Shown here: positions 108 through 64,000 of the stretch, piece after piece
How the letters are laid out: each line of letters starts with the position of its first letter
Numbering within the stretch: position 1 is the first letter of the stretch
Origin: Heteronotia binoei
Taxonomy: Eukaryota
Direction: 5' to 3'
NCBI RefSeq assembly: GCF_032191835.1
Contig: NC_083243.1
Span: 169,818,001 to 169,882,000 of the forward strand
DNA length: 64,000 nucleotides
Program-made: the position numbers and the translations under genes
The notes under the pieces: model-generated
Told to the model about the DNA's origin: nothing
Seen by the model: only the letters and a program-made list of their open reading frames with translations
The model's database searches: none

Positions 108-128
108 CTCATTGTTTCTTTTTAATAG
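108..128 (+). promoter_or_regulatory. Probable 3' splice acceptor upstream of the OR coding exon
   Basis: Pyrimidine tract ttgtttctttttaatAG ending 10 nt before the ATG; ORs typically have a 5' non-coding exon. Confidence 0.5.
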
Positions 129-138
129 TGGCAATGAG

Positions 139-4850: not shown

Positions 4851-5619
4851 GCTCCTTGAATCTTTCCTCCCTGTCAAATAGAACCCCAGCAAAACAGAAT
4901 ATTCAAATGGGCTAGAAAATGAATAAAATATAGATACTGAAAATCTTGTGCCAAATCAGACAGAGCATGCCATAGGGAAAGCCACTGAGGCACACAGCCC
5001 AAAAATTGCTGCAAACAATTTCATTAGAAAATTATAGTAAACCAATTCACACATTTAATTCCACATGCTGACTCGTTCAAACAACAGAAGCAACCACTGG
5101 GCAATACATAAGGAGCACCAACTCCATTCTATGTTGCTTTCACAAATAAAGACCTGTATCAGTTCTAAGGGCTCAGTAGAGTTCCAAATGTTCAAAATAA
5201 GTCCAAAAGTCCCCATAGGATGTAACTGCACAACGGTACATTGGTAAATATCTGTAAAAATTTTTTAATGAGTTTAATTAATTTAAAAATGCTGAGGAAT
5301 TAAAAATCACACTAAAAGTGTAACAGCTCTAAAACTCCTTGCCAAATCCCACTGTATAACCGATAAAATTATCAGAAATGATTTTTATTCTATAAATTGA
5401 ATGAATTGTAATCCCCTACTACGTAATATAAAAAACGAATGTTATATTTAAATTTAAATTAATGACCAATAATAATTTAATTTTTTTATTTATTTTAATT
5501 TTTATCTCATGCACATAGACACTTTGGAATCTACAGCCTACAAAAACCAACTATATCTAAACTGGAATTGAGAGCCAGGGCTCCTAATCTGAATGTTCAA
5601 AATGATTCTTCTCTGAGTA

Positions 5620-7660: not shown

Positions 7661-7969
7661 TGATTTATTTTGTTCTTGTGACTTGGTCACATTACTAACG
7701 AAAAAAATCTATTTTTTTTATGGAAGCTGGGAAAAAGTTTTGAAGAAACATTTTCAGTTTCAACAATTCTTTTTTAATAACTCCTTGTGAATATCTGAAG
7801 TGTGCAGGCACATGAAAGCTTACACAGAACAAAACTTAAAGATGCCACTAGACTCAAACTTTATTCCTCACGCTTCTGTTCTCTTTCCTGAGCCTTCTGT
7901 GTTAATCTTTCCTCAGATTCTTCTAACACTTTGGGAATAATTTTTTTCTCTTTATTACGAACAGATGAA

Positions 7970-8938: not shown

Positions 8939-9689
8939 TTTCCATATGCTTTAAAACTCATTCTGCACTTAGCACTTGCCTCTCTTCTGTGCGAGGCTCC
9001 TCATGGTGGCTCTCCCCCCCCCCCCAGATCTTGCATTGGCTTCTCTGGAGCAGGGCTGCATGTTTCCTGCTTGCTCCCTGCCTCATGCAAACCTGAGCAC
9101 TGAGAATGAGACCAGGACAAAGGCTAATGCAGAATCAGTCTCAGGTTCCAAAGTGGTGGTGGATGTCAGATTAGTGCATGTAATTTATCTACTTCTCCAC
9201 TGACATACTCAGGGTGGCTTACAACAAAACAAAAAATACTCCATTAAGGGCATCAGTTTGCTGTATTTAAAGAAAAAACCTAAAGTGAGATAATACATCG
9301 AACTGGAAAATAGATTGTTTGCTTGGAAGTTACTAACTTAAAGGAAGTTAAGATTTAGCTCAGCGTGCAAAAAATATGGAATCTACATAGGAAATGCTAA
9401 AGGTCGAGCGGGTGTTATAAAACAAGTGCAAGAGGAAAATAAACAGAATTTTTAAAAACCACAGGAAGAGAACAAGGAACAGATTCAAAATTTAGAAGAG
9501 ATGGGGTAACTGTTATTGCTCTAGTGATAAATGGATTAAGGCTGGCCATTGAGAGGGTGACAAACAATACTGACTGCCTGTCAAGGTCTAGAGGCCATAG
9601 GAGGAAGTCTGAATGGATCCCACTAACAGTGCGATCATCAGAAGTGGTGCAACATTTTGATGCTAATAACGAGAGGGGTGCAAGCATGA

Positions 9690-10297
9690 GTCTGTCCAAA
9701 TCTCGAACGGGACCCTTGTGCCCTCCAGCCACGATCGCCAGGTTTTTAGGGCGAATGTGATTGCGTAGGCTTCTTTATCCCACACCGACCAATTTTGCTG
9801 TTCGTTTGAAAATTTGCGCGAGATGTAGGCACACGACCGTAGGTGACCCTCCCCATCCTTCTGCATCAATATTGCTCCTACAGCCGTGTCGGAGGCGTCG
9901 CATTGCACCATGAAGGGCTTAAGCTCATTCGGGTGCACCAGCAGCGGCTCGCTGGTAAATAGGTGCTTTAGGGTGTCAAACGCCTCTTGGCACTGTTTAG
10001 TCCATGCGAGCTTGGCCCCGGGTTTTTTCGCTTCGGGCCCCTTCCCCTTGGTCTGGAGCAGGTCTGTCAGTGGTAGGGCCACCTTGGTGAACCCCTGAAT
10101 GAACGACCTATAGAAATTTGCGAACCCGAGGAAAGATTGGAGCTGTCTACGTGTCCTCGGGGGTTCCCAGTCTAATACTGCCTGTATTTTGGCCGGGTCC
10201 ATGGCTAGCCCTTTGTCCGACACCCGGAATCCCAGATAATCCAATTCCTTTTGGTGAAACTCGCACTTGGAGAGTTTAGCATAGAGTTTGTTCTGAT
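9690..10297 (-). mobile_element. Gypsy/Ty3 pol fragment (RT C-terminus to RNase H), inverted
   Basis: KLSKCEF, DYLGFRVS, MDPAKIQAVLDW, FLGFANFYR.FI, CDASDTAVGAIL, AYISRKF, EIWTD. Confidence 0.92.
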
Positions 10298-10767
10298 ACA
10301 AAAAACATAGCCCGGGTTGGGACTTCCAGGTGGGGGAGACAGTCTTCCTTTCCACCAAGAATCTGCCCGTGCCTCAGACTTCACGGAAGCTAGCCTACCG
10401 GTTTTTGGGTCCATTCAAGATAAAGAGAGTGATTAACAAAGTGACTGTAGAACTGGACTTGCCCAAGCTATTCAGTAAAATACACCCTGTTTTCCATTGC
10501 AGTCTTATCTGTCGCGATCCGGGTGGGTCGAAGTGGCATCCTCGGAGCTCCGAGCCGGAACCTATTCTGGTGAGGGGCCAGAAACACCACGAAGTGAAGG
10601 AGATCCTGGACGCTAAGCTGCAACGGGGGGTTTTGCACTATTTAGTCCGCTGGCGCCACTTTCCGCCTAGCTGTGATGAATGGGTGAAACATTCTGACCT
10701 AAATGCTCCTTTCTTGCTGAAGCAATTTTACCTACTGCACCCAGACAAGCCCCGAGCAACAGCTTAG
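10298..10767 (+). mobile_element. Gypsy integrase C-terminus (GPY/F module) plus chromodomain
   Basis: FQVGETVFLSTKNL, KLAYRFLGPFKI, IHPVFHCSL, HEVKEILDAK..RG.LHYLVRW......DEW. Confidence 0.92.
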
Positions 10768-11899: not shown

Positions 11900-12880
11900 C
11901 TTCCAGGTGCCCAGTAGTCACCATGACAGCCACTGCCAGTCCCTCCATTAATTGCTGTCCCTTCCTACCACTCATGACAGCTCTCCAGCTGCTCCTACTT
12001 CATCACTGCCCATGTAGATGACAGAGTGTGTGGGATGGGCTGTGCCAGGCATGGCCCCCTTGCCCAGATTTCCAACCTTGTCTGGTCCACCTGCAGCCAT
12101 TGCATCTGCCTCAGGGACATGCCTCATCCTTGCCAACCCTAGCCTCCCCTGTGTCTGGGGAGCCTGGGGTGCTACCGTCCAAAGATGAGCCTGCCTGCTG
12201 TTGCCTCCCCCTCAGCTGCTGGACCCATGGTCTCTGTGATGCCCTGTGATCACAGGGCCACAGAGGCTACTGTTGCTGTTTGCCTCATTGTAGGGAGGAT
12301 GCAGAGGTGGTCCATGACATTAGCAGCATACCTCAGAGAATAGAGACTTAGGGATAGGAGGAGAAGAGGGTAGATAGTCAGCTGGTGCTCCCAGTTAGGT
12401 GCACACACTGTGGTGCCCTAAGAACCACCTTGCCTCTTCCAGCCTCCTTGGACCTTCTCTTCACCCAATTGCATCTCCTCCTGCCTGGACATGTGGACGT
12501 GGGGCCCATGATGTGAGGTCCCTGAGGTGTCAGAGAAGCAGCCTGACTATGGATATGAGAGCATGACAATGGCAGAGTCACCCTCTTCTGTGGGGGTAAG
12601 AGTGGGGCCCAGTTGCTCTGGCTGATACTTTATCCAGGGGCCCCCTCAGTGACCTACAAGGATGGTCCTGTGACAGCATCCCCACTCTGTGAGGTGTAGG
12701 GAACCACTCAGGGCACCCAGAGGCTGGGTGATGCACCATGGGAAGACACTGATCCTTTTTCTTGCCCTATCCCCATGTGGATATCACCCAGCAGGAGGGG
12801 GCTGTATGTGCAAAGGAATAATCTGCGGAGAGAACTGGTACGTAATTTAGGTCAGCTCACCCCGTTACAATACATGAACT

Positions 12881-19277: not shown

Positions 19278-21845
19278 TTTGTTGTTGTTCAGTCGCACAG
19301 TTGAGTCCAACTCTTTGTGACCCCATGGGGCCCTCCTGTCTTCCACCATCCTCCAAAGTCTGCTCAAATTCGTGTTTGTTACATCAGTAATGCTGTCTAG
19401 CCATCTCATCTTTTGCCAGCCCCTTCTTTTGCCTTCTGTCTTTCCCAGCATCAAGATCTTCTCCAGTGAGTGCTCCCTTCTCATTTGGTGGCCAAAGTAT
19501 TTGAGCTTCAGCTTTAGCATCTGACCTTCCAGGGAACAGTCTGGGTTGATTTCCCTTAGGACTAATTTGATCTTCTTGCAGTCCAAGGGACTCTCAAGAT
19601 TCTTCTCCAGCACCACAGCTCAAAAGCATCTATTCTTCTGCACTCGGCCTTCCTTATGGGCCAATTCTTGCAGCCATACATTCCTACTGGGAATATCATC
19701 GTTTTGACTATATGGACTTTTGTTGGCTGGGTGATGTTTCTACTTTTTATTACACTGCCCAGGTTCACCATAGCTGTCCTCCCAAGGAACAAACATCTTT
19801 TAATTTCATGGCTACAGTCACCATCTGCAGAGATCTTGGATCCCAGAAATTTGAAGTCTGTCACTACTTCCATGTCTTCCCCTTCTATTTGCCAAGATGT
19901 GATGGGGCTGGATGCCATGATCTTAGGTTTTTTTATGTTGAGTTTCAAGCCTACTTTTGTGCTCTCCTCTTTCACCCTCAACAAGAAGTTCTTTCACCCT
20001 TTCAAGAGGTTCTCACTTTCTGACATTAGAGTGGTGTCATCTGCATATCTGAGATTGTTGATATTTTCCCCGGCAATCTTAATTCTGGCTTCTGCTTCAT
20101 CCAGGCCAGCATTCCGCATGATGTACTCTGCATATAAATTAAATAAGCAGGGTGACAATATACATCCATGTAGAACTTATTTTCCTATTCTAAACCAATC
20201 AGTTGCTCCATATCCCGTTCTGACAGTTGCTTCTTGACCCCTATACAGGTTTCTCAGGAGACATGTGAGGTGGACTGGTATTCCCTTCTCTTTAAGGACT
20301 TGCCCCAGTTTGTTGTGATCCACACAATCAAAGGCTTTAGTGTAGTCAATGAAGCAGAAACAGATGTTTTCCTGGTACTCCCGTGCTTTCTTCTACCGTT
20401 TTTGTCTTTTATCATGGCCATCTTTGCACTAAATGTTCCCTTGATTTCTCCGATTTTCTTGAAGAGATCTCTTGTCCTTTCCATTCTATTATTTCTCTAT
20501 TGCTTTGCATTGTTCCTTCAGGAAGGCCTCCTTATCTCTCCTTGGTGTTCTCTGGAAATCTCCATTCAGTTGTGTGAATCTTTCCTTTTCACCTTTGCCT
20601 TTCACTTCCCTTCTTTCCTCAGCTATTTGTAAAGCCTCATCAGACAGCCACTTTGCTTTCTTGCATTTTTTTTTCCTTTGGGATGGTGCTGATTGCTGCC
20701 TTCTGTACAATGTCACGAACCTCCGTCCATAGTTCTTCAGGCACTCTGTCTATCAATTCTAGTTCCTTAAACCTATTCTTCACCTCTACTGTATATTCAT
20801 AAGGGATGTGATCAAGGTCAAACCTGAATGGCCTAATGGCTTCCCCAGTTTTCTTCAGTTTAAGCCTGAATTTTGCAATGAGTAGCTCATTATCTGAGCT
20901 GCAGTCAGCACCAGGTCTTGTTTTTGCTGACTGTAAGGAGCTTCTCTATCTTTATATACTCTATCTGTAGAGTATATAATCAATCTGATTTCTGTGTTGC
21001 CCATCAGGTGATGTCCATGTGTAGAGTCACCTTTTAGGTTGTTGGAAGGTGTTTGCTATGACCAGCTTGTTCTGTTGACAAAATTCTATTAGCCTTTGCC
21101 CGGCTTCATTTTGTTCTCCAAGGCCAAACTTGTCAGTTGTTCCGGTTACCTTTTGACTTCCTACTTTGGCATTCCAGTCCCCTATGATGATGAGGACATA
21201 TTTTTTTGATGTTAGTTCTAGAAGGTGTTGTAGTTCTTCATAGAACTGGTCCACTTCAGTCTCTTCTGTGTCAGTGGTTGGGGCATAGACTTGGATTACT
21301 GCGATATTGAATGGTTTGCCTTGGATATGGACTGAGATCATTCTGTCATTTTTTAGATTGTATCCCATTACTTCCTTCCTCATTCTCTTGTTAACTATAA
21401 AGGCCACACCATTTCTTCTATGGGACTCTTGCCCACAGTAAGAGATGTAGTGATCCTCTGAGTTAAATTCATCCATTTCTGTCCATTTTAGTTCAGTGAT
21501 CCCCAATATGTCGATGTTCAGTCTTGCCATCTCTTGTTTGACCACATTCAGCTTACCTTGATTCATAGATCTTACTTTCCATGTTCCAATGCAGTATTGT
21601 TCTTTGCCGCATTGGACTTTCCTTTCACCATCAGACACATCCACAGCTAAGCATCCTTTCGGCTTTGACCCAGCCACTTCACTCTTTCTGTGGTTAGTTG
21701 TACTTGCTCTCCACTCTTCCCCAGTAGCATAAAGGACATCTTTGGACTTGAGGGGTCATCTTCCAGTGCCATATCTTTTAGCCTTTTGTTACTGTCCATG
21801 GGGTTTTGTTGTTGTTGTTCAGTCACACAGCATGGGGTTTTAGCA
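19278..21845 (-). mobile_element. BovB/RTE LINE, long copy with stops, frameshifts and an internal deletion
   Basis: APE endonuclease (IGTW.VRSMNQGKL, IQVYAPTT, IGDWNAKVG); RT (FCFIDY.KAFDCVDH out of frame, F..LGSKI..DGDCS.EIKR, IDAFELWCWRR.LRVPWTARRSN); (CAA)n 3' tail. The deletion joins KDKNGR to the RT region near 20392. Confidence 0.95.
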
Positions 21846-29947: not shown

Positions 29948-30901
29948 ATGCATCCGGAGAACTGCACTGCAATGCTGGACTTCATCTTGTTGGCTTTTCC
30001 CATTCAGCTGGAGCTTGAGATCTTACTTTTCTTGGGCATCAGCCTAGTCTATGCAATCATAACAACAGGTAATGTGCTTATTATGTTAGCTATCTGGGGG
30101 GACCCTCACCTGCATACTCCCATGTACTTCTTCCTGGGAACTTTGTCTGTTGTTGAGCTCAGCTATACAGCAGTTGTAGTTCCACAGATGTTAGTCACTA
30201 GCTTGCAGGAGAGGAAGTTCATCACTTTTATGAGATGTAGCACTCAGATGTTCTTTTTTATTGGCTTCGGTAGTGCTGACTGCTTCTTGCTGGCCGTCAT
30301 GGCCTATGACCGTTACATAGCAATTTGCAAACCCTTGCGCTACACCCTCATCATGACACAACATATATGCACTCAGCTAGTGGCTGCCTCACTGCTGATT
30401 GGCTTCTTGATTTCATTAATGTTGGTGGGGCTGGTCTTCCACCTCCCCTTCTGTGGTGAACATGGAATCAAACACTTCTTCTGTGACGTGCCACCCATAT
30501 TGCAGCTCACCAGTAACAAGACCAAACTTGATGAGGTCGGGGTGTTCTTCAGTGGGATACTGGCCATTGCTGTGCCCTTCATATTGATCTGTACCTCTTA
30601 CCTCTTCATCGCTGTCACAGTGCTGCGGATCCATTCCACTGAAGCGCGTCGAAAGACCATCTCTACTTGCTCCTCACATTTAGCGGTGGTAGCTCTGCAG
30701 TATGGCTGCTGCAGCTTTATGTACTTGCGCCCAAGTTCCAGCTTTTCTCCAAAGCAAGACCAGATGCTGTCAATGGTGTACACTTTAGGCACACCACTAT
30801 TCAACCCCATCATCTATACCCTGAGAAACAGAGAGGTGAAAGCAGCCCTGAGGAAAGTAATCAGCAATCATATCTTCCAAAGGAAATCTGTATGCCATTG
30901 A
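29948..30901 (+). CDS. OR10W1: Olfactory receptor, OR10W1-like, 317 aa, open reading frame intact
   Basis: OR motifs present. YTAVVVP, GSADCFLL, ILAIAVPF, LQYGCC.FMYL.PSSS..PKQD and VYTLGTP match human OR10W1 as I recall it. Confidence 0.88.
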   Translation: MHPENCTAMLDFILLAFPIQLELEILLFLGISLVYAIITTGNVLIMLAIWGDPHLHTPMYFFLGTLSVVELSYTAVVVPQMLVTSLQERKFITFMRCSTQMFFFIGFGSADCFLLAVMAYDRYIAICKPLRYTLIMTQHICTQLVAASLLIGFLISLMLVGLVFHLPFCGEHGIKHFFCDVPPILQLTSNKTKLDEVGVFFSGILAIAVPFILICTSYLFIAVTVLRIHSTEARRKTISTCSSHLAVVALQYGCCSFMYLRPSSSFSPKQDQMLSMVYTLGTPLFNPIIYTLRNREVKAALRKVISNHIFQRKSVCH

Positions 30902-36261: not shown

Positions 36262-36730
36262 ATATGACAAATATTATTATTTTGGGGGGTATTAATTAAT
36301 TATTCAGGGGCTCCTCTTCAGAATCCTGACCTGACCCTCAAAAAGAGAGGGAGGGAGGGTGAAAGAAAGAGGGAGTTAAACCCTGGTCCTACTCACTTGC
36401 AAACATATATAAACACATTCACTGCCCCCTATGTAAGAAAGAGAAGCACCATGGAAAATTGGCAGCAGGGTGGGGGGGAGAGGCTTGCGTGGCTCCAGTC
36501 ATCTCTGTAAAAATCCAAGCAAAGTGCAGGCCTCCTTGGGGCTGGAGGAGACAGCATCTCTGCCCTGTCCTCCCCTTTCCAGGCATCAGCTGCAGCAGCA
36601 GACACCCTCCTTCCTCCATCTCCATTTGTTAGGCCTTTGAGGGCTTGTGGGGGAGAGACTCACACACACCTGGCTGCACATCAAGAGCCACCGCTGTCCA
36701 GCTTGGCCTGGCCCCCACCTGGTCTAGAGC

Positions 36731-37368
36731 TCCATCTGACGTCCAAACTTGCTCACTTGCTCCCTCCAGCAAGCTGCCTTTGGCCTAGTCTTTACTGTCT
36801 GTATCTCAGCAGTTTTGGCCAAGACGGTGACTGTGATGATGGCATTCTGTGCTTCCCAGACTGGCAGCTTCCAGAAGTGGATAGATTACAAGCTCCCTGG
36901 AGCTATCACTCTTTGCTGCCCACTAGTCCAAGATGCTTTATGTGTCTTCTGGGTACTAAATGGCCTCCGTTCCCATCACAGAACCCACTGCAGGGAGGAG
37001 CACAAGTGACCTTAGGGTGTGACAAAGGCTTCATGAAGTTCTTCTATATCATGCTGGGCTACCTGGGCTTGCTGGCTACCATAAGCTTAGGAGTGGCTTT
37101 CCCATCTCTTCAGCTGCCAACAGCTTTTAATGAGGCCCAGCACATTGCCATCAGCATGCTAGTCTTCACTTTTGTTTGGGTCTCTTTTGTGGCATCATAT
37201 CTCAGCGCAATAGAGAAGTACATAGTGACTGTGGAGATTTTTGCTATCTTAGCCTCTGGGGCTGGATTGCTGGCATGCCTTTTCTTCCCTAAGTGCTATA
37301 TCATTTTGTTGAGGCCTGAGAAGAACAACAGAAACCACCTTCTGGGGCAAAACTTTACTCAGAAATAG
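36731..37368 (+). pseudogene. Vomeronasal type-2 receptor (class C GPCR) 7TM fragment, TM3 to C-tail
   Basis: RPNLLTCSLQQAAFG..F.VCIS.VLAKT, then after a -1 frameshift (~36955-36963) WPPFP, LGYLGLLA, LP.AFNEA, VEIFAILAS.AGLLAC.FFPKCYIILLRPEKN. The Gly of the I-G-R-P motif is TGA (36737). The terminal TAG belongs to a MITE TIR. Confidence 0.9.
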
Positions 37369-40280: not shown

Positions 40281-41234
40281 TCACATTGCAAACTGCTTGG
40301 TCTTAGCAATAACCCTGTATAAGGCACCCTTCACTTCTGTGTTTCTCAGGCTATAGATTAAAGGGTTGAGCACAGGGGTGACTATTGCATAAAAGACAGA
40401 GACTACCTTGTTGAAGTTGATGACTGATGAGTCAACTTTAGTGCGGACATACATGAAGAAAAGTGTCCCATAGAAGACAGACACCACAGCGAGGTGGGCA
40501 GTACAAGTTGAAAAGGCACGGTGACGCCCTGCCAAAGAGTGAATCTTTAACACTGTAGAGATAATATAGACATATGACACTACTATGATAAAGGAGGAAA
40601 TCAGAAGCACAGCCAGGGAGACCAGGAAATCTATCATCTCTTTTAGGGAAATGTCAGTGCATGAGAGAACAAGGAGTGGGGAAGCATCACAGAAGAAGTG
40701 GTCTATCACATTAGGGCCGCAAAAAGTCAGCTGTGACATGTAGTAAATAGGCAGCACGGGGGTGAGGAGCCCTGCTAGCCATGATCCACCAGTCAGCAGC
40801 AGACAGGTGTCACGACCTACTATTGCTTGGTAACGCAGCGGCACACAGATAGCCACGTAGCGGTCATAGGCCATGGCAGCTAAAAGGAAGCACTCAGTGC
40901 TGCCCAAGAAGGTGAAGAGGTAGAGCTGGGTCAAACAGGCAGAGTAGGAAATTGTCCTACCACTTGAGGATCCAAAACCAGCCAGCATCTTTGGCACTGT
41001 GAGAGAGGTATAACAGATGTCCAAGCATGAAAGGTGAATGAGAAAAAAATACATAGGCGTGTGCAAGTGCTTTTCCATTGCCACAACTAGGATCAGGATA
41101 CCATTCTCCATCAGAGTCAGCAAATACATGACCAGGAAGAAGCAAAAAACAGGCAAATGTCCCTCTTGGATGCTTGTGAAACCCACCATGACAAATTCTG
41201 TTACCAGGGTCCAGTTGTCAGGAGGAGGCCACAT
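40281..41234 (-). CDS. OR6Q1: Olfactory receptor, OR6Q1-like, 317 aa, intact
   Basis: NWT.VTEFVM.GF, TVPKMLAGF, DASPLL.LSC.D, DFLVSLAVLL.SS and FYGTLFFMYV.TKV.SS.INFNKVVSVFY match human OR6Q1 as I recall it; ttgattctctAG acceptor directly abuts the ATG. Confidence 0.93.
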   Translation of the reverse strand: MWPPPDNWTLVTEFVMVGFTSIQEGHLPVFCFFLVMYLLTLMENGILILVVAMEKHLHTPMYFFLIHLSCLDICYTSLTVPKMLAGFGSSSGRTISYSACLTQLYLFTFLGSTECFLLAAMAYDRYVAICVPLRYQAIVGRDTCLLLTGGSWLAGLLTPVLPIYYMSQLTFCGPNVIDHFFCDASPLLVLSCTDISLKEMIDFLVSLAVLLISSFIIVVSYVYIISTVLKIHSLAGRHRAFSTCTAHLAVVSVFYGTLFFMYVRTKVDSSVINFNKVVSVFYAIVTPVLNPLIYSLRNTEVKGALYRVIAKTKQFAM

Positions 41235-48800: not shown

Positions 48801-48984
48801 AATATTTAAAAACAACAACCAGAAGTTAGTTAAATGTTTTGCTGATGCCAAGTGGAACTCATAGGTCCCCTTTCAATAATGTCTGGTTTTTAGAGTTTCA
48901 GTTGGATGGCTTTTACGTTTTGTTCCTTCTTCCTAGAATGCAATGGGTTAAATGTGGGCTGTTCTGCTATTATATAAATATGAG

Positions 48985-49160
48985 AGCCAGTGTAGTCTGG
49001 TAGTTAGAGATTCAAGCTAGGGCCTGGAAGTCCCAGATTCAAATCCCCACTCTGCCATGGAAGTTTGCTGGGTGGCCTTGGGCCAATCACTCTCTCTCTG
49101 TCTTCTCAGGGCACTTTTGAGGATAAAATGGAGAAGAGTCTCCACTGGGGAGAAAAACAG
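48985..49160 (+). mobile_element. tRNA-derived SINE
   Basis: gtgtagtctggtagttagag A-box-like and cccagattcaaatccc B-box-like motifs; related remnants near 32410-32500 and 41435-41580. Confidence 0.6.
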
Positions 49161-49579: not shown

Positions 49580-50584
49580 TTATGTATGTGTTGAGATCCC
49601 TGTCAATACAGTAACGAGGGTCTTTCCTCTGTGCTTCAGACATTTGTTCTTGACTCTCTTGCAGGCTTTCTCCAAGGCTTTTCTTACATCTTTGTTCCTT
49701 AAAGTATAGATGATAGGATTCAGCATTGGTGTGATGATAGCATAGAAAACAGATACTACTTTGTCCATACCAGAAGACTGGTCTGAGCGTGGGCAGATAT
49801 ACATGAAGATGACTGTGCCATAGAAGATGATGACTACCACCAAGTGGCTAGCACATGTAGAAAAGGTCTTGTATCTTCCAGAAGCAGATGGGATCCGGCA
49901 GATGGTAGAAACTATCAAGCCATAAGAGGCCACAGTCAGGAAGAGGGACACAAGTACAACCACTGCAGAGACAAGGAAGACCATCACTTCAGCAATGAAG
50001 GTGTTGCTGGTTGCCAGCTTAATTAGGGGGCCTGTGTCACAAAAGAAATGATTGATATGGTTGCTGCTGTTGAAGGACAGCTGGGAGATGAAGGCTGTGG
50101 GCAAGAAGGGTGTCAGAAAGCCACTCACCCAAGAACCCAAGGCTAAATAAGCACAGGAACAGCTATCCATGAGTACAGGGTACTGCAGTGGATGGCAGAT
50201 GGCTAGGTATCTGTCATAGGCCATTGTAGCCAGGAGAAAGAATTCTGTGGTTCCAAAGAAGAAGAAGAAATACATCTGGGTGATGCAAGTCCAGAAGGAG
50301 ATAGCATGAGAGCCAGTAACAAAACTCCCCAGTAACTGAGGCACCGTGACTGAGACATAGCACATCTCTAGTAAGGAGAAATTGCTCAGAAAGAAGTACA
50401 TGGGGGTGTGGAGACTCACATCCAGATTTGAGATTCCAATGATCAAGGCATTGCCAAAGAAGGTGAAGAGGTAGGCAGTCAAGAAAATTACAAATAAAAG
50501 GAACCGGAATTCCTGTAGTTCAGGGAAGCCCAACAGGATGAACTCGGGAACTGAGGTGTCATTCAGCATATTCTTGGCACTCAT
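49580..50584 (-). CDS. Olfactory receptor, family 6/11-like (resembles OR11L1), 334 aa or 329 aa from Met6
   Basis: LHTPMYFFL, MAYDRYLAIC, HFFCD, KTFSTCASH, PMLNPIIYTLRN; NDT sequon; start may be 50584 or 50569. Confidence 0.9.
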   Translation of the reverse strand: MSAKNMLNDTSVPEFILLGFPELQEFRFLLFVIFLTAYLFTFFGNALIIGISNLDVSLHTPMYFFLSNFSLLEMCYVSVTVPQLLGSFVTGSHAISFWTCITQMYFFFFFGTTEFFLLATMAYDRYLAICHPLQYPVLMDSCSCAYLALGSWVSGFLTPFLPTAFISQLSFNSSNHINHFFCDTGPLIKLATSNTFIAEVMVFLVSAVVVLVSLFLTVASYGLIVSTICRIPSASGRYKTFSTCASHLVVVIIFYGTVIFMYICPRSDQSSGMDKVVSVFYAIITPMLNPIIYTLRNKDVRKALEKACKRVKNKCLKHRGKTLVTVLTGISTHT

Positions 50585-50875: not shown

Positions 50876-53009
50876 TATTTTAATGCATTTTAAAAACAGA
50901 ACTATTATTAGTGTTTTAAAGTGGGTTTGCTGTAAGAATAAGCAATAAAGCTCCTTTTCACAGTCATTTGTACATAATGACATCAACAGAAGCTGACTTT
51001 TCAGTGATTTTAGAGCATTGGACTGGTCTTGTGAATACCATGTCTAAATACATTTCATCATATTCTGGGAGAATCTTCACAGCTGGATCATTCCTAATGA
51101 TTTCTAAAGTCACTAAGTAATGGTTATGCAAATTTGCTGCAAAATCGCAAGTCAATTCAACAGTTACAGCAAATATACTCCCATTTCTTATTGAGCGACT
51201 CAAATTATTCTTTCCATGATCCTGATACAGGATTTTAAGTCACTTGTTTCCACAGTTAAAAACATCCAGAGACTGAAGAAACAGAGTTATATGTGATGAA
51301 TCAACAGAATGACAGCCTGTAAGCCAAATCTGAACATCCACACATTTCTAAAATAATATTTATGAGTTAAAGATCTCTAGAAAGGACACCTCAGTAAACT
51401 CCAACTGCCATAAAATTGTTTCTTATTAAGCCCACTAAGAACTGTACATTAGATATGTTTAACTGGGCATTGTTAGATTGGAACGTTTGGCTTTCCAGCC
51501 ACAGAGTTACATGGGCAAGGGGGTAAAATTCATGATCACATTTTGTAATGATTACAAAGAAATGGAAAGGAGGTTGGAGAGTTAAAAATCCTAAGGATCC
51601 AATCTTATACGCAGTTATTTTGAATTAAATCTAGTGAATGAAGTGAGATTTACTTGTAAATTGGGCAGGATTAGGCTGAAAGAATACGGCACATTAAGAA
51701 AGTGATTTTACTCAGGAAAGTTGTGTAGGTAAGATATGAATTTTAACTGTAATTAGATTTGCAAATTATTTACCTTCCATGAAGTGCTGCCTTTTTCATG
51801 TCTGCTCTGCTGCAGTGAGGCAAGTTCTCCCCAAAAAGCATTACTCCTTTGATTTGGAAAGACACTACCATTCAGTCACAGCATCCCTGACAGCTCTTGG
51901 ACTCTAGGCTGCTCAAGGAGAGAGGGTGAGGTGGTTACCAAATAAGAACAGTTCTAATCTTTCATTAGAATTACCGCTGAACACACCATTAATGTCTTCT
52001 GAAAAGGCCTGTATGGGTAATCTACTGATAAAATAGTTCGAAGCCTTATTAGCCCTGGAATGCAGTTTTCCAATAATGGCATGACATGCAAGACCAGAGG
52101 AGTTTGTAATACTTGGTACTGAAGGCTCTTCCATTATCCAGTATCCGCACATCACCATAGCTGAGATCCTTTAACTAGACATGTTGAATATTGAACTCAA
52201 GCCTTTATGCATGCAAACTATGTGTTCCAGGGCCAGTTCCCAGTTTTGGGGGGCCTTGGGCAGAGAATGCTCAGTCCGCCCGCCCCCCCATTCCCGCTAC
52301 TTGTTCCCCATCTTTCCTACATACCTCCAAGCCTGCATGCTCTTTCCCCAGTGATGCTGAGTGGTGGTTGCAGCTGGAAGTTCCAATGCTATGGCCACCA
52401 GGAATGCTGCTGCTTTGTGCACCACTGGCATGCCCTTCCCCTGCAGCACTAGGCAACATATGTACCTAGAACCACATGCAGTAGAAGAGTGAGTGTGCAG
52501 ACATCAGAGATGTGCTAGCAGGGAGTCAGCAGCAATGAGCCCTGCCAGAAGCCATGAGCCCTGGCAGTTGCCACGCTTCAAGGTATGCCGACATTGCCAC
52601 TGACGTGCTTCATCACTGACCAGAATAGCAGCAACTACATTTCTTATGCCATGTACCCAACAGATTCTTGACAATTCTAGAAACAGGCTGATAACAATGC
52701 ACATTGCCACAGGGGCCGAGGTCAGACGCACATAAACTGACGAGATGGGCATGGATGAAAGCCAGATGCATGTCGGATTTTATGCGGTTGTCCAAACATC
52801 GGCATCTGACAATGGTCGTTGGCTCGTTCATGCCCCGAACTGCCACGACTGAGATGCAGACTTTTTTGATAGTACATTAAATCCGGAATAAGAATGCTTC
52901 TGATGACTCCCACGCATACTTTCTATGTTTGAATGCTCCATTGTAGCCGACTTGTCGCAAGCGCACATCCGCTTCCTTGCGAGAGCCCACTCCAAATGAT
53001 ATCATTGCG

Positions 53010-56500: not shown

Positions 56501-57249
56501 AATAATGGCACAAGATTTTGTGAATCAGAGCCCCCTTTGTCAGATGCATGTTCATCGGATTACCAACTTTTAAACTGATCTATCGAGCTGCCCTTTAATA
56601 TCAGTTTGATCAAGAAGCAATTATCGGATGATGTTATTTAGCTTCATACTATGAAAAGCTTCAAATTCAGTTTGCAGCAGGCAAAACAACTCTCTGTATT
56701 TTTTCTAACTCTTCAATATCATTTTTGAGATATGGTGATCAGAAATGTACACCATAGATCTATACAGGGGCATTTACAATATTGGTCATTTTAATCTCTT
56801 CCTAATAATCGCTAACATAAAGTGTGCCTTTTTCACTGCTGCAGCACACTGGGTTGACACTTTCATTATGACCCCAAGATCTTTTCCCCTCTCATTCTCA
56901 GCAAATTCAGAACTCATTAGCCTGACTTGAAGCCAGGATTCTTTGTCCCAGTGTGCACCACCTTATACTTACCAACACTGCACTTCATTTGCCACACTGT
57001 TGCCCACTCAGGCAGTTTGTGGAGGCCCTCTTGGAGCTTTTCACAGTCAGCCATGGTTTTCACCATCCTGAATAATTTTGTGACATCTACATAACTCACC
57101 CCTAGTTCCAGATAACTGATGAATAAATTAAGTAGTACCAATATCGATCCTTGTGGGACCCCACCACTTACTTCCCTCCATTGTGAGAACAGTCCATTGA
57201 TTCTGACTCTGCTTCATGTCATTTACCCAGAGAATCCATCCACTTATCC

Positions 57250-57805
57250 CAGGGGTGTCAAACATGTGGCCCAGGGCCCAATCAGACCCCTGGAAGGCTT
57301 CCTTCTGCATCACAGCTTGCTTTGTCAGGCTTGTTCAATCATACAGGAGCTACAGAGCAAAACCTCTATTTTCTCCACTGGCTGAGGTTCCTCCCTTTGG
57401 GAGGAAGCGGGGGGGGAATAGCTTGCTTTGCCAGGCTCTCTCAATCATGCAGCAGAGCTAGTGAGCCAAGCCTCTCTTCTATTGGCTGAGGCTCCTCCCC
57501 CTCCTGGTGCCATGGGGAAGGTAGGAAAGAGCCAGAGCTCCCTTTGCACAGTTCCCTGGAACCCATGGGAGAAATACAAAGCAAGCACCTTTAAGACCAA
57601 TGAGTGCTAATGTTTTAAGTATGTTTTATTTTTATTCTTTTAAAAAAATCTTTACTTGTGTTAGTTTGTGTCCTTTATAAAGTTTATATCTCTGCTACCT
57701 AATCTTAAATAGGTACGCGCATGGCCCTGTCAGACATGGCCCAGCCCGACAAGGTCTCATTTATGTCAGATCCGTTCCTCATAACAAATGAGTTTGACAC
57801 TCCTG
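57250..57805. mobile_element. hAT (Buster/Charlie-type) MITE, CAGGGGTGTCAAAC TIR
   Basis: TIRs caggggtgtcaaac / gtttgacactcctg; ttatcc repeated on both flanks. Confidence 0.85.
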
Positions 57806-57902
57806 ATTATCCCATGACTGCTGAGTTTACTCAGGAGTCTTTGGCGAGGTACCTCATCAAAAGCCTTTTGAAAGTCCAGGCACAGGTCACCACTGTCTAC
57901 AT

Positions 57903-58214: not shown

Positions 58215-59879
58215 GTCTACATACTTGTTCACTTTCTCAAAGAACTCCAAAAGGCTAGTGAGGCAGGACTTCCCTTTGCAAAAGTCATGCTGATTTTCCG
58301 TCATCAGGCTTTGTTCCTCTAATAATTCTATATTTGATTACATTTGCCTAGGAAAGATATTAAGCTAACTGGCCTATAATTTCCTACTTCCCCTCTGGAC
58401 CTCTTTTTAAACATTGTGATATTTACTGCTTTCCAGTCTTCTAGTACAGTAGCTGAATTTAGTGATGTTACGTATACAGGTTAGTAGATCAGCAATCTCA
58501 CATTTGTGTTACTTAAGAAGTCTTGGGTGTCTGCCATCAGGACCTGGAGACTTACTGGTTTTTATTTCCCAATAAGTCTAGAACTTAATTTCTTGTCACC
58601 TTTAAAATAGCGGCTGGAACATGGGTGCATGTTCACACTTTTCACAATGAACAGAGAAGCAAAGAATTAATCAAGCTTATCTGCCATTTTCCCTTCTTCC
58701 ATTCTCAGTCCCTTTATTCCTAGGTCATCCAAAAGCCTAACTGCTTCTCTGACTGCTTTCCTGCTCTGGGTATATTTAAAGAAATGTTTACTGTTTGTCT
58801 TGATGCTTTTAGCAATCTGCTTCTCAAATTCTCTTTTTACATCCCTAATTATTGACTTACATTTCTTTTGCCAGAACCTGTGGTTCCTTCTGTTTGATTC
58901 ACTGGGGCAGATTTTTCACTAAAGGAAGCCTCTCTTTACTTTTTATAGCTTCCTTGACTTGCATTGTTAGCCACACAGGCCTTCTTTTAGACTTGGCAGT
59001 ACATTTCCTTATCTGTGGAATGCATTCTATCTGGGCTTCAATTAGTGTGGTTTTAAATAGCTTCCAAGAATCCACTAGCCGTCATTTGTTATGAGGGCTG
59101 GATTTGATACAAATAGGACTTTATGGGGCCAAGCCATGCATGTCATAAAATATAATGCCAGGTAACGGAGCTATAAACTTTATAAAGGATACAGATAAAC
59201 ACAATTAAAGATATTTTTTTTTACTTAAAATACAAACATACTTAAAACTCATGATATTTTGTTTAAAACAGAAAGCTGAGGGAATAGTGGGATTTGGCAA
59301 TGCGATTTTAAAAATAAAACATCAAGAAAAGGCACAAGGATCACAGCAGATACTAAAAATATAAACTAGAAATATAAATGTTCTGAGCCTTGAAAAACAT
59401 GAAATGGCTGGGTATTGCAAGCTTCTCCCCCACCCCACCCCACCTACTCAGACTGGCAATGACTCTCCAGTATAATATCCCCCTTTGGCTGTGGGTTCCC
59501 AGATTAGAGTACTCACTTAGCATCAGTTCTCAGGTCCATTCAGCAGAGATAAGCTGGCTCAAAGCATCAACCCTTTATAGGCTTGTTAGTCCCCATGTCC
59601 GAGTGGATGATCCCCCAGTTTTGCAGGCTCCTCCCCACCACCTGTCAGCCAGCTGGTGGCGGGAAGCCCCATCCCAACAGCCACAATGTGCCTTTAGATT
59701 TTAGGCAGGTTCAGAAGCTTGCAGCTGCTTCTTTGGAAGGTGCATGTGTCCCTTTGAATCTCAGTGAAACTGAAGCTGTGGGAGTGGGGTGAGTGAAGAG
59801 CCACATGTGTGTGAAAGAGAGAGAGAGAAAGAAGAGGAAGAGAAGAGATTGGATTTATACTCCACACTTCACTACCTGT

Positions 59880-60900
59880 GAGAGTCTCAGAGCAGCTTGC
59901 AATCTCCTTTCCCTTCCCCTCCCCACAACAGACACCCTGTGACGGAACCGGCCCGATTCTGCCTTCAGACCCGGTCCCGTCTGCTCCCTATTGAGTCGCC
60001 AACTCCTGGAAGGAGCTATTTCTCCTCCTGCCCCTTGGGCTCGCTGCCACCACCTGCTCAGTCTAGGGGTTCAGATTGAGAGGAACAGGACTCCCAATCC
60101 CCCTCTCCAGCTATGAGGCTAGGCCTCAAGGTCCTCTGCCACCCCGTACTTGGGTTTCACAGAGACCTCAGCACTTCTTTGGGGCACCCCTGGAGGATTG
60201 GCACCTTATACAACTGCATGCCTTCCCCCTTCCCCGGGGCCCCCTTTATAAAGCAGCGTGGTCTGAGCGGTCGGGGATCTATGTGGTACAGAGATGGACT
60301 GCCAGCATTCAAAACAGAAAAAAAATGTTTATTTAAAAGAGAAAAAGAAAGGAAAAGAAAAACAAAACAAAAACAGTTGCATATAAAAAGTTAGCACAGC
60401 ACAGCACCCACACAGCAAACAGCATGACAAAGGAAAGGTTTCTACTGTCCCTGGTCTAAACTTGCCCTGTCTTGAGAATGACTTACTTGGTCTGACTGCC
60501 TGGGGCCTCACAGGCAGGAGCCTCCATGCTCACCACATGCTCGCTTGAGCGCTAGTTCCAAACTGCCTTCTCTTCCTGCCTAACTCACATGCAGAGAACA
60601 AAAGAACTTCCTGCCTCTCTAGGAGACTTTCCCCCTAGCGTTGTTGGTTTGGCTCTGGAAGGGAGGGGGGGGAGTGAGGGGAAGGCTAGGCCAAAGCCTG
60701 CTTAGGAGTTTCATGTCTTCCCTCCCAATGAAGCACCAACATTGACTAAAATGGCGTTTCTCCACACACCCTATGAGATAGGTGGAGCTGAGAGAGTTCT
60801 GACAGAAACTGCTCTTGAGAGGAACAGCTCCGCAAGAACTTGTGGATGACTCAAGGTCACATGAGCATGTAGAGTAAGCCCAAGGCTTAAATGAGCATTG
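59880..60900 (-). mobile_element. SINE split by a solo LTR
   Basis: cccttcccctccccacaacagacaccc | tatgagataggtggagctgagagag joins cleanly once the LTR is removed. Confidence 0.7.
59938..60766 (-). mobile_element. Solo LTR, 829 bp
   Basis: TG...CA ends; perfect 5-bp TSD caccc (59933-59937 and 60767-60771); AATAAA on the minus strand near 60328. Confidence 0.88.
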
Positions 60901-60989
60901 TTCCATAGATCTTTGGGGACATCTCCTGGACAGTGCTTTGGGCCTCCAGAACATGGTTGACAACACTATAAACAGTCTGTTTTTTGCTA

Positions 60990-61060
60990 GTTTTTAATTA
61001 GCTGTCCGCAAGGCCTACAATGGAATTCACTAATGAGGGAAGACTTTTTAATGAGGCATC
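60990..61060. promoter_or_regulatory. Homeodomain-site cluster, candidate OR enhancer core
   Basis: TTTTAATTAGC (60992), TAATGA (61031) and ACTTTTTAATGA (61043-61054) within 65 bp. Confidence 0.5.
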
Positions 61061-61234
61061 AAAATGGGAACTAACAGTAAATTTATGACTTTTAAGTCTG
61101 TGAAGAGAAAAACTAACTTGGCAAAATGCCCTTTTTTGTTTTGAGGTTAACCACAGTCTCAAGAGGTGAATCAAAGGCTACTAGCCCATATCGTTTTAAT
61201 ATTAGCTAAGAAATCTGTTGCTTAAAGTTTAGAT

Positions 61235-62074
61235 CAGGAGTGTCAAACACCCGACCCGCAGGCCGAATCCGGCCCACCAAAGGCTTTGATCAGGCCCGCA
61301 GGACTCTTTTCTCCCCCTCCTGTTCTTACCCTTTGAAGCTCCCAGGCTCTTTGAAACTTCCAGACTGAGACTCTTTCAGTTTCAGCCTGGGAGCTTCAAA
61401 GGCTCTTTGAAGCGCCTTTTGAAGCTTGCAGGCTAAGTCCCAGGTTCTTCCTGCCTTTCTTTGCTGGCTGCTGCAAGGAAAATGTGGGGTGGATTTTAAG
61501 ATCCATTCCACATTTTCCTTGCAGCTTTGTCTGTACTCTGCAATGGTTTCAAATGGAGTGGAGATGGTTACATTTTCAGCTTTCCTATAGCTAGTTGGAA
61601 CTCATGCTTCCTGGAGTTGTGTCCTTGCAAACAAGGGTTGATGCTTTCAACCAGCTTATCTCTCCTGAATGGACCTAACCTAGTGAGTCCTCTAATGTGG
61701 GAACTCACAGCCAAAGGGGGATATTATACTGGAAAGACTTTGCCAATCTGAGTAGACTTGTGGGGAGAAGTTTACAATGTCATTTGATTGCTTCCACAGA
61801 GTCAGAGCCTTGTGCTTTTTCTTGATGTTTTATTTTAAAAATTGCATTGCCAAATTCCACTAGTCACCCACCTTTCCAACTTAAACCATTGGAAGAGTTC
61901 TAAGCATGTTTGTATTTTAAGTTTTAAAAAATATCTTTAATTGGGTTTGTCTGTGTCCATTATAAAGTTTATATCTCCACTACTTGGCATATTTTATGAC
62001 ACTCATGGCCCGCCCCCACAAAGTCCCATTTGTGTCAGATCCGGCCCTCCTAAGAAATGAGTTTGACACCCCTG
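61235..62074. mobile_element. hAT (Buster/Charlie-type) MITE, 840 bp
   Basis: TIRs caggagtgtcaaac / gtttgacacccctg; perfect TSD gtttagat. Confidence 0.92.
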
Positions 62075-62988
62075 GTTTAGATTCTGAGAAGTTCATAAAA
62101 TAATAATTTTGAGCAGTATTTATTAAAATGAAGTTATAAAGGAATATTCTGTTAAAGAGTCTCTGAACAAGCAGATAACATCAAGAAAAATGCTTTCCTT
62201 GTTAACATGATTTGTTAGCACCCAAATGTAGAATAGTTCTCTGCTGTATGTTTATCACAAGGCTTTTAAATGCTTAATACTGTATTTAAAACAATTATAT
62301 ATATTGATTATATTCAGCTAAGGAAATGCATGAAGTTGGAAATGCATGAAGTTTAAGCAGTCTGATTATTAATCTACCAGAATGTGTAGTATAACGTTGC
62401 AGTCAGCATTATTTTAACAAAGGTAAACTTTGTTACTGGAAAATATTTCCAGCTAATTAAAACACAAGGTCAAAGAAGGCTGGGATAAGAGCCAAAAGAG
62501 ATAGCCAACTAAAATACTTCTAACACAACAGATATTTTGATATTAATGCCCTGTATAGAACCTTTGAACCAGGTGAAGTAAATCAAATTTTGAAGGCTAA
62601 TTAAAATAGTAATTAGAACATCAGAAATGATTTCTATACAAAGAGGGCCCTCAAATCGTTAAGAAGAAAAGTGTTTTATTTACAGTTTTTGCAGGAAATA
62701 AAAACTTAAATATCTTGAAAAATCAGATAAAAATTTCTGATTAGATAATGAACAAGAATATATAGTCAAGAAAGAAAAATGAGTTCTTTTAGCATATGCT
62801 ATTCTGAAGCTGAAAAATCCATATAAAAGTTCAGTTTTTCTAAGAAATGGCTGATGTGGTATTATTATCAATAATTGTTTTCATATATTTTGTAGAAATG
62901 CTTAATAAACAAATGTTTTTATATGTGTTATGCTTGCAAAAACAGTATTATACAATATAAAGTTTTGCTTGTAATATGAATTTAAGGT

Positions 62989-63395
62989 TGTAAATTCATG
63001 AGAGATGGAAAATCTAGGAAAGTAGCCAACTGAAGATAGTGAGAAAGTCATTGTCAGGAAGGATGTTACATTTCATTTTTAAAGAGGAAGTCTTGACAAG
63101 ACACCTGTGGATGAAAAGGACAGTAAAGTTGAAAATAAGCCAGGAACATCTTGTTTGTCAAATGTAAGATTAATTAATGTCAGAGACAATAAAAATGCAA
63201 GAGCGCATGCATGGTGATGTCAGATTAATGATATAATCGAGAGGAGAGACCACGAGTATAAAAGTTTGAACACAACTGGAACTCATTGAACAACTGTGGC
63301 TGTATATTGTTCCTTAATCAAATAAAACCTTTGTTACCTTTTTTTTGCTGTCCGGATTTTGCCTCACTGTGTGACTTTAATTGGCTAGTCACACA
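62989..63395 (+). mobile_element. Probable solo LTR
   Basis: TATAAAA near 63257, AATAAA near 63321, end ...gtcacaca; start and TSD not resolved. Confidence 0.45.
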
Positions 63396-64000
63396 AGCCA
63401 AAGAACCTTAGCTCCCTGAGGGCATTGCTTTCAAGCAGATGTATGTGGAGGAGTGGGAAATCAAACCTGATTCTCCCAGATAAGAGTTCACACACTACAC
63501 CACTACACCAAACTGTCTCTCACACCAAACTGAAAAGAAGGAAAAAAAGAAGCCAGAGAACCCAGTCCCTCTGTTTGTTTTGCATTAATTTCAAAAGCTA
63601 TTTTCATTAAAAATAGGTTTAGTAGAGTTAACTTGAACCTAAGTATGGGATAGAAAGAAACTCCACCCCCAGACCTTTCTCTCCATAAATTGATTGAAAT
63701 ACGGCAGCTTGTTACATTCAGCAATTCCAGTGATTAAAACTTAGCTATCTATACCATTGCCCCATGGAGATTTTTAAAAAGTGTGGGCATGCAAACTGTT
63801 TGGTTTGGCTGGTTTGTGAATGTGTGCATGAGAGAGTTCACTTTCATTTTAGTGGAAGTGCAGCTGCTATTGAACTATTTGAATGCAAAAAAAGAGGAGG
63901 AGGAAATGAAGACTGTATTCAGGGAAACTGCACTGCTGTATTTTTATTCCTTAATTTTTAGGGAATGAGAAAGTCTCCCGGCTCTATTCCCAAAGTCCCC

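What the first reader, a model, noticed from the sequence alone, without database searches (positions are those of the whole stretch)
60990..62615. Candidate reptile OR-cluster enhancer (H/P-element or Greek-island-like), split by a MITE
Seen: in non-repetitive DNA more than 10 kb from any OR ORF in the window, ACTTTTTAATGA (61043-61054) lies 12 bp after another TAATGA (61031). The 11-mer TTTTAATTAGC occurs three times (60992-61002 on +; 62452-62462 and 62596-62606 on -), with GTAATTAG at 62609 and an imperfect O/E-like TCTCAAGAGG at 61157. Established: the mouse H and P enhancers share the homeodomain 13-mer AACTTTTTAATGA, and OR enhancers are defined by clustered Lhx2 (TAATTA/TAATGA) and Ebf sites. 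Inference: this may be a squamate counterpart of the elements driving singular OR choice, which I do not know to be described in reptiles. Removing the 840-bp MITE (61235-62074) leaves an ~800-bp element. Caveats: AT-rich DNA yields such motifs by chance, and I see no perfect Ebf site.
Basis: partly seen in the sequence, partly recalled or inferred. Interest (0 to 1): 0.75.

Follow-up and report, generated by a model that had tools for sequence, protein, structure and literature searches.

The report
Cluster of Lhx2-type sites, gecko OR cluster
In a gecko smell-receptor gene cluster, about 800 bp of unique DNA split by a jumping-gene insertion carries an unusually dense set of near-identical binding sites of the kind mouse receptor-choice enhancers use; it is a statistically real but unproven enhancer candidate, with no partner Ebf sites and no conservation evidence.

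Summary
The 840-bp insert is a real hAT-type MITE with an 8-bp target duplication. The cluster exceeds chance only for the Lhx2-type extended site. TTTTAATKAG occurs 4 times in the 786-bp MITE-excised element, and TAATKAG 6 times. In 252 kb of real squamate OR-cluster DNA, no window of equal length holds more than 1 or 2. The generic homeodomain core TAATKR is not exceptional, and O/E (Ebf)-like sites are at background. No Ebf consensus with one mismatch or fewer lies in the element. One site matches 12 of 13 bases of the mouse H/P motif. Two sites fit the published permissive Lhx2-Ebf composite pattern, which is not significant given the homeodomain sites. The repeated sites have unrelated flanks, so they are neither duplications nor a common repeat. 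Conservation could not be tested. Synteny with two other geckos is colinear up to 56.5-56.7 kb and then lost, and the fetchable flank ends short of the element. Nine other species show nothing similar within 10 kb of the orthologous receptor. Verdict: plausible olfactory regulatory module (about 0.45), enhancer favoured over promoter, unproven.

The parts
60910..60918 (-). O/E-like site (YYYCARRRR) to the left of the homeodomain triplet
   Evidence: This pattern occurs at background density in the window (2.27 per kb).
60992..61002 (+). Extended Lhx2-type site 1, TTTTAATTAGC
61031..61037 (+). Homeodomain site TAATGAG
61043..61068 (+). ACTTTTTAATGAG: 12 of 13 bases of the mouse H/P extended homeodomain motif and 13 contiguous bases of the x21 21-mer. 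From 61049 it also fits the permissive composite Lhx2-Ebf pattern.
61157..61166 (+). O/E-like site TCTCAAGAG(G)
61227..61234 (.). Left copy of the 8-bp target-site duplication GTTTAGAT
61235..62074 (.). hAT-type MITE (840 bp) with 14-bp terminal inverted repeats. It hits none of the listed motifs.
62075..62082 (.). Right copy of the target-site duplication GTTTAGAT
62452..62462 (-). Extended Lhx2-type site 2, TTTTAATTAGC (shares the 13-mer TTTTAATTAGCTG with site 1)
62584..62606 (-). Extended Lhx2-type site 3, TTTTAATTAGC, followed by a pyrimidine-CA-purine stretch that fits the permissive composite pattern with the 1-bp spacing seen in mouse Sfaktiria
62609..62616 (+). GTAATTAG, a sixth TAATKAG site 12 bp from site 3
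60400..60880 (.). High-copy dispersed repeat that bounds the unique left arm. It is not part of the element.
   Evidence: depth of hundreds to thousands up to 60869, then about zero.

Best explanation
The two unique arms (about 60900-61170 and 62450-62620) form a homotypic cluster of high-affinity LIM-homeodomain (Lhx2-type) binding sites in the long gap upstream of an olfactory receptor gene.

The most likely function is an olfactory-neuron cis-regulatory module of the mouse H/P/Greek-Island kind. In that model Lhx2 occupies the four TTTTAATKAG sites and the two further TAATKAG sites. It recruits Ldb1, possibly with weak Ebf co-binding on the degenerate sites next to 61049 and 62598. This keeps a small island open inside OR heterochromatin and raises the chance that neighbouring ORs are chosen.

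Within this reading I favour a distal enhancer (about 0.28) over the promoter of the unseen right-hand neighbour (about 0.17).

Shown here: the sites, their excess over background, their identity of form with sites in functional mouse elements, the unique-DNA context, and the MITE inserting between the two sub-clusters without hitting a site.

Inferred: all protein binding, chromatin opening and any effect on OR choice.
For: Density. TAATKAG occurs 6 times and TTTTAATKAG 4 times in 786 bp. AT-matched real-sequence means are 0.35 and 0.05, with maxima of 2 and 1 in 2435 windows. The element ranks first in 211 kb.

Shared flanks. The homeodomain sites share more flank identity with each other than random homeodomain pairs do: 2 pairs at 13 of 22 or better among 46 pairs, against 0.1 expected. 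Beyond 13 nt the flanks are unrelated. That pattern is expected for selected binding sites and not for duplications.

Match to mouse elements. There are 13 contiguous bases of the mouse x21 gene-choice enhancer and 12 of 13 of the H/P motif. TTAATTAGC is present in the mouse enhancer-hub construct.

Composite pattern. Two sites fit the published composite pattern.

Architecture. The left arm holds the only triple-homeodomain cluster in the window, flanked by two O/E-like sites within 257 bp, an H/P-like layout.

Context. The site is intergenic, 10.4 kb from the nearest OR. A separate, gecko-conserved homeodomain block at about 52 kb is the better promoter candidate for that OR. Many mouse Greek Islands also lack a scored Ebf motif.
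Against: No Ebf site with one mismatch or fewer lies in or beside the arms. O/E-like sites are at background. The composite matches are not significant once the homeodomain sites are given: about 0.7 expected, 2 seen. Generic homeodomain density is ordinary.

No similarity and no comparable cluster was found within 10 kb of the orthologous OR in nine species, including two geckos whose neutral DNA aligns at 70-85% up to 56.5-56.7 kb.

There are no accessibility, binding or expression data.
Confidence: 0.45

Rival explanations
1. The cluster is non-functional. AT-rich OR-cluster DNA, non-independent local sequence evolution and selection among many scanned windows produced a run of similar TAAT-type words with no regulatory role.
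For: The element has 31% GC. Generic TAATKR and O/E-like densities are ordinary. No Ebf site is present. No conservation was detected. In real sequence, some 11-mer repeated three times or more within 1.7 kb occurs at about 7 loci per 64 kb. The motif definition was chosen post hoc.
Against: The other repeated-11-mer loci are mostly tightly spaced copies, whereas here the flanks are unrelated. No other 786-bp window in 252 kb exceeds 2 TAATKAG or 1 TTTTAATKAG, against 6 and 4 here. The repeated word is the Lhx2-type site seen in mouse enhancers rather than an arbitrary word.
Confidence: 0.33
2. It is a promoter and not a distal enhancer. The homeodomain cluster would sit just upstream of the non-coding first exon of the next OR to the right, beyond 64000, or of a far-upstream alternative first exon of the OR at 49580-50584 (-). 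This is a sub-case of the regulatory reading above, and its probability is included in that reading's 0.45.
For: OR promoters also carry homeodomain and O/E sites, and the extended motif occurs in the mouse P3 promoter. In Elgaria the orthologous OR has a head-to-head OR neighbour 10 kb upstream. A similar TTTTTAATGAGT lies 2.7 kb upstream of another OR in this window. Earlier notes on this genome report short upstream first exons in gecko ORs.
Against: Composite-type sites are reported as depleted from OR promoters. The OR at 49580-50584 has a nearer, gecko-conserved homeodomain block at 51955-52191. No exon or TSS evidence exists, and RNA contigs are absent from the left arm (those runs are metatranscriptomes of unstated tissue).
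Confidence: 0.17
3. It is a relic of a low-copy DNA transposon whose subterminal transposase-binding repeats survive. The layout is two copies on the + strand at the left and two on the - strand at the right.
For: The orientation is symmetric. The region is rich in hAT elements.
Against: No terminal inverted repeats or target duplication bracket the arms. Flank similarity is at the random level. Contig depth is zero in libraries where real repeats are covered hundreds to thousands of times. No copy was found in the window or in 189 kb of other squamate loci. Old decay would not leave three perfect 11-mers.
Confidence: 0.07
4. It is a homeodomain-site enhancer used outside the nose, for example by other LIM- or paired-class factors acting on a non-OR gene to the right of the window.
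For: TAATTAG is bound by many homeodomain proteins, and the right-hand neighbourhood is unknown.
Against: The site lies inside an OR/V2R cluster. The best match is to the olfactory gene-choice motif.
Confidence: 0.07

Closest known systems
Mouse H and P elements (class II OR enhancers) and the derived x21 'gene choice' 21-mer
   Same: The site at 61043-61055 matches 12 of 13 bases of the extended homeodomain motif and 13 contiguous bases of x21. Several homeodomain sites lie with O/E-like sites within about 260 bp. The location is intergenic in an OR cluster.
   Different: No sequence homology could be shown. The O/E-like sites are no denser than background. There is no functional test. The first base of the 13-mer differs (G in place of A).
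Mouse Greek Islands (e.g. Lipsi, Sfaktiria) with the Lhx2-Ebf composite motif
   Same: TTAATTAG(C/G)-type Lhx2 sites as in the published enhancer-hub construct. Two sites are followed, after 1 bp, by a pyrimidine-N-purine stretch that fits the published permissive pattern.
   Different: There is no recognisable Ebf half-site (no G-rich arm). The composite matches are not significant. The two sub-clusters were about 550 bp apart before the MITE, wider than the 360-570 bp Greek Island intervals listed. Binding, accessibility and hub contacts are unknown.
Mouse TAAR enhancer TE2
   Same: A tight homotypic group of TAATGA/TAATTA sites that occurs only once in the cluster.
   Different: It belongs to a different receptor family, and TE2 was defined by conservation, which is lacking here.
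OR promoters with homeodomain and O/E sites
   Same: The same factor logic. The extended motif also occurs in the P3 promoter.
   Different: No nearby TSS or exon is known, and composite-type sites are reported as depleted from promoters.

Membership tests
Greek Island / OR-cluster enhancer | Intergenic position inside an OR cluster | tested here: met
   Five intact ORs in the window. The nearest ends 10.4 kb away, with no OR fragments nearer.
Greek Island / OR-cluster enhancer | Lhx2 binding motifs | tested here: met
   Six TAATKAG in 786 bp against an AT-matched mean of 0.35. These are motifs only; binding was not tested.
Greek Island / OR-cluster enhancer | Ebf (O/E) motif close to the Lhx2 motif | tested here: not met
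   No TCCCNNGGGA with one mismatch or fewer in or beside the arms. No YCCCNNGGGR or YYCCNNGGRR. Only two YYYCARRRR sites, at background density.
Greek Island / OR-cluster enhancer | Composite Lhx2-Ebf motif with 1-bp spacing | tested here: inconclusive
   Sites at 61049 (+) and 62584-62603 (-) fit the published fuzznuc pattern. That pattern hits 159 times in the window (10 with a TAATKR core), and about 0.7 matches are expected given the homeodomain sites. The HOMER matrix and its score were not available.
Greek Island / OR-cluster enhancer | Lhx2/Ebf co-occupancy and open chromatin in mature olfactory neurons; interchromosomal hub contacts | not testable with these tools
   The only public runs found were three metatranscriptomes.
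Greek Island / OR-cluster enhancer | Sequence conservation in related species | tested here: inconclusive
   Colinear alignment with Eublepharis and Paroedura ends at 56.5-56.7 kb. In Eublepharis a LINE fills the rest of the flank; in Paroedura the remaining 4 kb is unrelated. No hit in nine species within 10 kb.
H/P-type element | Extended homeodomain motif AACTTTTTAATGA | tested here: met
   12 of 13 bases, with 13 contiguous bases of x21. One hit in the window against 0.02 expected.
H/P-type element | Enhancer activity in olfactory neurons (transgene or deletion) | not testable with these tools
   An experiment is needed.
OR promoter | Position within a few hundred bp upstream of an OR transcription start | not testable with these tools
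   No olfactory RNA data, and the right-hand neighbour lies outside the window.
hAT-superfamily MITE (the insert) | Terminal inverted repeats, 8-bp target duplication, no coding capacity, many copies | tested here: met
   14-bp terminal repeats with one mismatch and the duplication GTTTAGAT. Only short ORFs. Further copies in the window and over a thousand related contigs per run laid on the stretch, concentrated on the MITE and the 60400-60869 repeat.

The most novel reading that the evidence does not exclude
A gecko Greek-Island-type enhancer built from four near-identical extended Lhx2 sites, one of them the mouse H/P 'gene choice' motif. This would show that the extended homeodomain grammar of singular OR choice is shared between mammals and squamates, and it would give a first concrete sauropsid element. 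It would work without canonical Ebf sites, would tolerate a MITE insertion between its two halves, and would possibly be lineage-specific, since no counterpart was found in the 10 kb of flank that could be fetched upstream of the orthologous OR in two other geckos.
Probability: 0.22. Interest if true: 0.6.

Novelty: new member of a known kind. Interest (0 to 1): 0.38.

Why it matters
The papers read here place OR-choice enhancers in mammals, with reporter activity of some mouse elements in zebrafish. My one literature search for reptile OR enhancers found none. If this cluster is active, it is a short, well-defined test piece with four near-identical sites. It could be used to ask whether Lhx2-driven enhancer logic, with or without Ebf, operates in sauropsid OR choice, and how such elements arise and survive transposon insertion. 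As it stands it is a motif-based candidate. Olfactory ATAC-seq in any gecko would settle it and would find all such elements at once.

Tried and rejected
1. Local duplication of the three 11-mers. Flanks of plus or minus 60 nt align no better than shuffles.

2. A common transposon. Contig depth is zero on the arms, and no copies were found in the window or the loci.

3. Ebf sites. None were found at any reasonable stringency.

4. Reaching the ortholog of the element in Eublepharis (L001) and Paroedura (L007). Alignment is colinear to 56.5-56.7 kb and is then blocked by a LINE (an RT domain at L001:501-2042) or by unrelated DNA. The 10-kb flank limit stops there.

5. Walking to an upstream neighbour gene. 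No gene lies within 10 kb upstream in eight of the nine species; only Elgaria has one, with just 22 bp of it in the locus.

6. The 12-mer in Sceloporus at L003:16512. It lies downstream of the gene, beside a microsatellite and what looks to me like a SINE-type repeat, so I discounted it.

7. Public sequencing runs. Only three metatranscriptomes were found, and they cover the repeats and not the arms.

8. Earlier scan notes near this place or on Lhx2 or enhancers. There were none.

9. The HOMER composite matrix is not printed in the papers, so I used the published fuzznuc pattern instead.

Full report
**What is there.**

The window is an olfactory-receptor (OR) cluster of a gecko.
- It holds five intact ORs: 67-1092 (+), 7931-8938 (+), 29948-30901 (+), 40281-41234 (-) and 49580-50584 (-).
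- It also holds a V2R fragment and retroelement ORFs.
- The OR at 49580-50584 is 90% identical to a leopard-gecko protein and falls in the same 90% cluster as a Paroedura picta protein.
I confirmed only that it is a gecko.

**The observation.**

Every motif is at the stated coordinates.
- The insert at 61235-62074 is a hAT-type MITE. It has 14-bp terminal inverted repeats with one mismatch and an 8-bp target duplication GTTTAGAT.
- Two more fragments of the MITE family lie at 57612-57808 and 59082-59575.
- Over a thousand related contigs per run from three metatranscriptomes were laid on the stretch, concentrated on the MITE and on 60400-60869.
- The same contig layout shows that 60400-60869 is another high-copy repeat. 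The candidate's arms have zero depth at 60964-61151 and 62092-62467.
- So the unique left arm starts near 60880, and the 'non-repetitive' claim holds as far as these data go.

**Is it more than chance?**

- Against shuffles of the window, the 12-mer ACTTTTTAATGA is expected 0.02 times and the 11-mer TTTTAATTAGC 0.04 times against 3 seen.
- I then used real sequence as the null: the rest of the window plus 189 kb around the orthologous OR of nine other reptiles (eight squamates and a turtle), 252 kb in all.
- In windows of the element's length with GC of 0.36 or less, TAATKAG averages 0.35 (maximum 2) against 6 in the element. TAATKAG covers TAATTAG, which I recall as HOMER's Lhx2 consensus, and the TAATGAG of the mouse x21 motif.
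- TTTTAATKAG averages 0.05 (maximum 1) against 4 in the element.
- The generic core TAATKR is unremarkable at 7 against 2.9, with a maximum elsewhere of 8.
- The homeodomain sites of the element resemble each other in their immediate flanks more than random homeodomain pairs do. Beyond about 13 nt the flanks are unrelated.
- This argues against duplication and against an old repeat.
- Caveats: the pattern and boundaries were chosen after seeing the data. Real genomes do contain repeated-11-mer loci, about 7 per 64 kb, mostly as tightly spaced copies.

**Comparison with the mouse elements.**

- The papers confirm the extended homeodomain motif AACTTTTTAATGA in H, P and the P3 promoter, a near-copy in the J element, and the 21-mer x21 used as a gene-choice enhancer.
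- The site here has 12 of the 13 bases and 13 contiguous bases of x21.
- The published enhancer-hub construct, which starts with Lipsi, contains TTAATTAGC and TTTAATTAGG. That is the same form as the thrice-repeated site here.
- The Sfaktiria composite probe shows the Lhx2 hexamer, one base, then a degenerate Ebf site.
- A later paper gives a permissive search pattern for this composite. The sites at 61049 (+) and 62584-62603 (-) fit it.
- That pattern hits 159 times in the window. About 0.7 matches are expected from the homeodomain sites alone.
- There is no Ebf consensus with one mismatch or fewer in or next to the arms.
- The O/E-like definition YYYCARRRR is met at 60910 (-) and 61157 (+), which is only background density.
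- About a quarter of mouse Greek Islands also have no scored Ebf motif. This weakens the case for a Greek-Island-type element but does not by itself exclude one.

**Conservation.**

- With Eublepharis (L001) and Paroedura (L007) the intergenic DNA upstream of the OR aligns colinearly at 70-85% identity, from about 48.8 kb (Eublepharis) or 46 kb (Paroedura) to 56.5-56.7 kb.
- In Eublepharis the remaining 5.3 kb of the fetched flank is a LINE.
- In Paroedura the remaining 4 kb matches nothing in 56.7-64 kb and has no recognisable transposon protein.
- Window 56.7-60.9 kb is itself a patchwork of repeats.
- The ortholog of the element, if any, therefore lies beyond the 10-kb limit of the tool.
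- In Hemicordylus, Sceloporus, Varanus, Elgaria, Podarcis, Candoia and the turtle Emys, neither similarity to the arms nor any comparable site cluster occurs within 10 kb of the orthologous OR.
- Deep conservation of the kind seen for the mammalian J element is therefore not seen within 10 kb of the orthologous OR, the only range I could search. Gecko-level conservation remains untested.

**A useful comparator.**

- About 1.4-1.6 kb upstream of the OR at 49580-50584 (-), window 51955-52191 is conserved in all three geckos (86.5% with Paroedura over 52081-52184; alignment).
- The homeodomain sites in the 51955-51995 part of that block are largely invariant across the three geckos.
- This is the better promoter candidate for that OR. 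It shows what conservation of a functional homeodomain block looks like at this evolutionary distance.
- It makes it less likely that the 61-kb cluster is that gene's promoter. The cluster could still be the promoter of the unseen neighbour to the right; in Elgaria a head-to-head OR lies 10 kb upstream.

**Explanation and odds.**

- Regulatory module for olfactory neurons built on Lhx2-type sites: 0.45 (distal enhancer 0.28, promoter 0.17).
- Non-functional cluster: about 0.33.
- Relic of a low-copy transposon: 0.07.
- Non-olfactory homeodomain enhancer: 0.07.
- The two arms may be two modules and not one 800-bp element. The left core (60910-61166) has three homeodomain and two O/E-like sites in 257 bp. 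The right group (62452-62616) has three homeodomain sites in 165 bp. Before the MITE they were about 550 bp apart.
- The MITE inserted 68 bp to the right of the nearest listed site and disrupts none of them.

**Novelty and interest.**

- My one search of the paper library for reptile OR enhancers found none.
- If real, this is a new member of a known kind and not a new kind.
- The evidence is motif statistics only. The logic is expected to be conserved, since some mouse elements work in zebrafish.
- Interest is therefore moderate.

Noticed in passing
window 51955-52191 (- strand); L001:7340-7790; L007:7400-7760: A block conserved in three gecko genera 1.4-1.6 kb upstream of the OR at 49580-50584. 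Its homeodomain sites (TAATGG, TAATTC, TAATGA) are largely invariant. It is probably this OR's promoter or first-exon region. An Ebf-like TCCCCAGTGA lies at 52345.
   Followed up: partly
window 5261-5273: TTTTTTAATGAGT, which matches 12 bases of the mouse x21 motif, followed by TTTAATTAAT. It sits in a very AT-rich stretch 2.7 kb upstream of the OR at 7931-8938 (+) and may be a promoter-type site.
   Followed up: no
window 56528-56689; L001:1-5264; L007:1-3955: Colinearity with both other geckos ends here. Eublepharis has a LINE with an RT domain (L001:501-2042). Paroedura has 4 kb of unrelated DNA. In the window, 56.7-60.9 kb is a patchwork of repeats.
   Followed up: partly
window 57612-57808 and 59082-59575: Two further fragments of the same hAT MITE family, about 73% identical to the copy at 61235-62074.
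   Followed up: partly
window 36637-37368 (+); L008:19507-21149: A V2R-type (7tm_3) ORF fragment inside the OR cluster. Podarcis has a full V2R gene two genes downstream of the orthologous OR, so the OR-OR-V2R order may be old.
   Followed up: partly
L005:4318-4388 (Elgaria): Four homeodomain sites within 70 bp, with an O/E-like TCTCAAAGG about 150 bp away, in the middle of the 10-kb gap between two head-to-head ORs. This may be a functional analogue. It has no sequence similarity to the gecko element.
   Followed up: no
window 63446-63522 and 48980-49098: Both stretches match the same segment of Hemicordylus L002 (about 12633-12751). The first also matches Varanus and Paroedura loci at 70-78%. 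This looks like an old dispersed repeat.
   Followed up: no
window 62550-62706 and 62947-63189: Single low-depth RNA contigs, 86-90% identical, from the metatranscriptomes. I cannot tell whether they are orthologous transcripts of a related species or low-copy repeats. The first overlaps Lhx2-type site 3.
   Followed up: no
window 62322-62353: A perfect tandem duplication of the 16-mer GGAAATGCATGAAGTT.
   Followed up: no
window 9663-10358 (-) and 21027-21677 (-): Retroelement ORFs: RT-associated RNase H, and an endonuclease/exonuclease/phosphatase domain.
   Followed up: no
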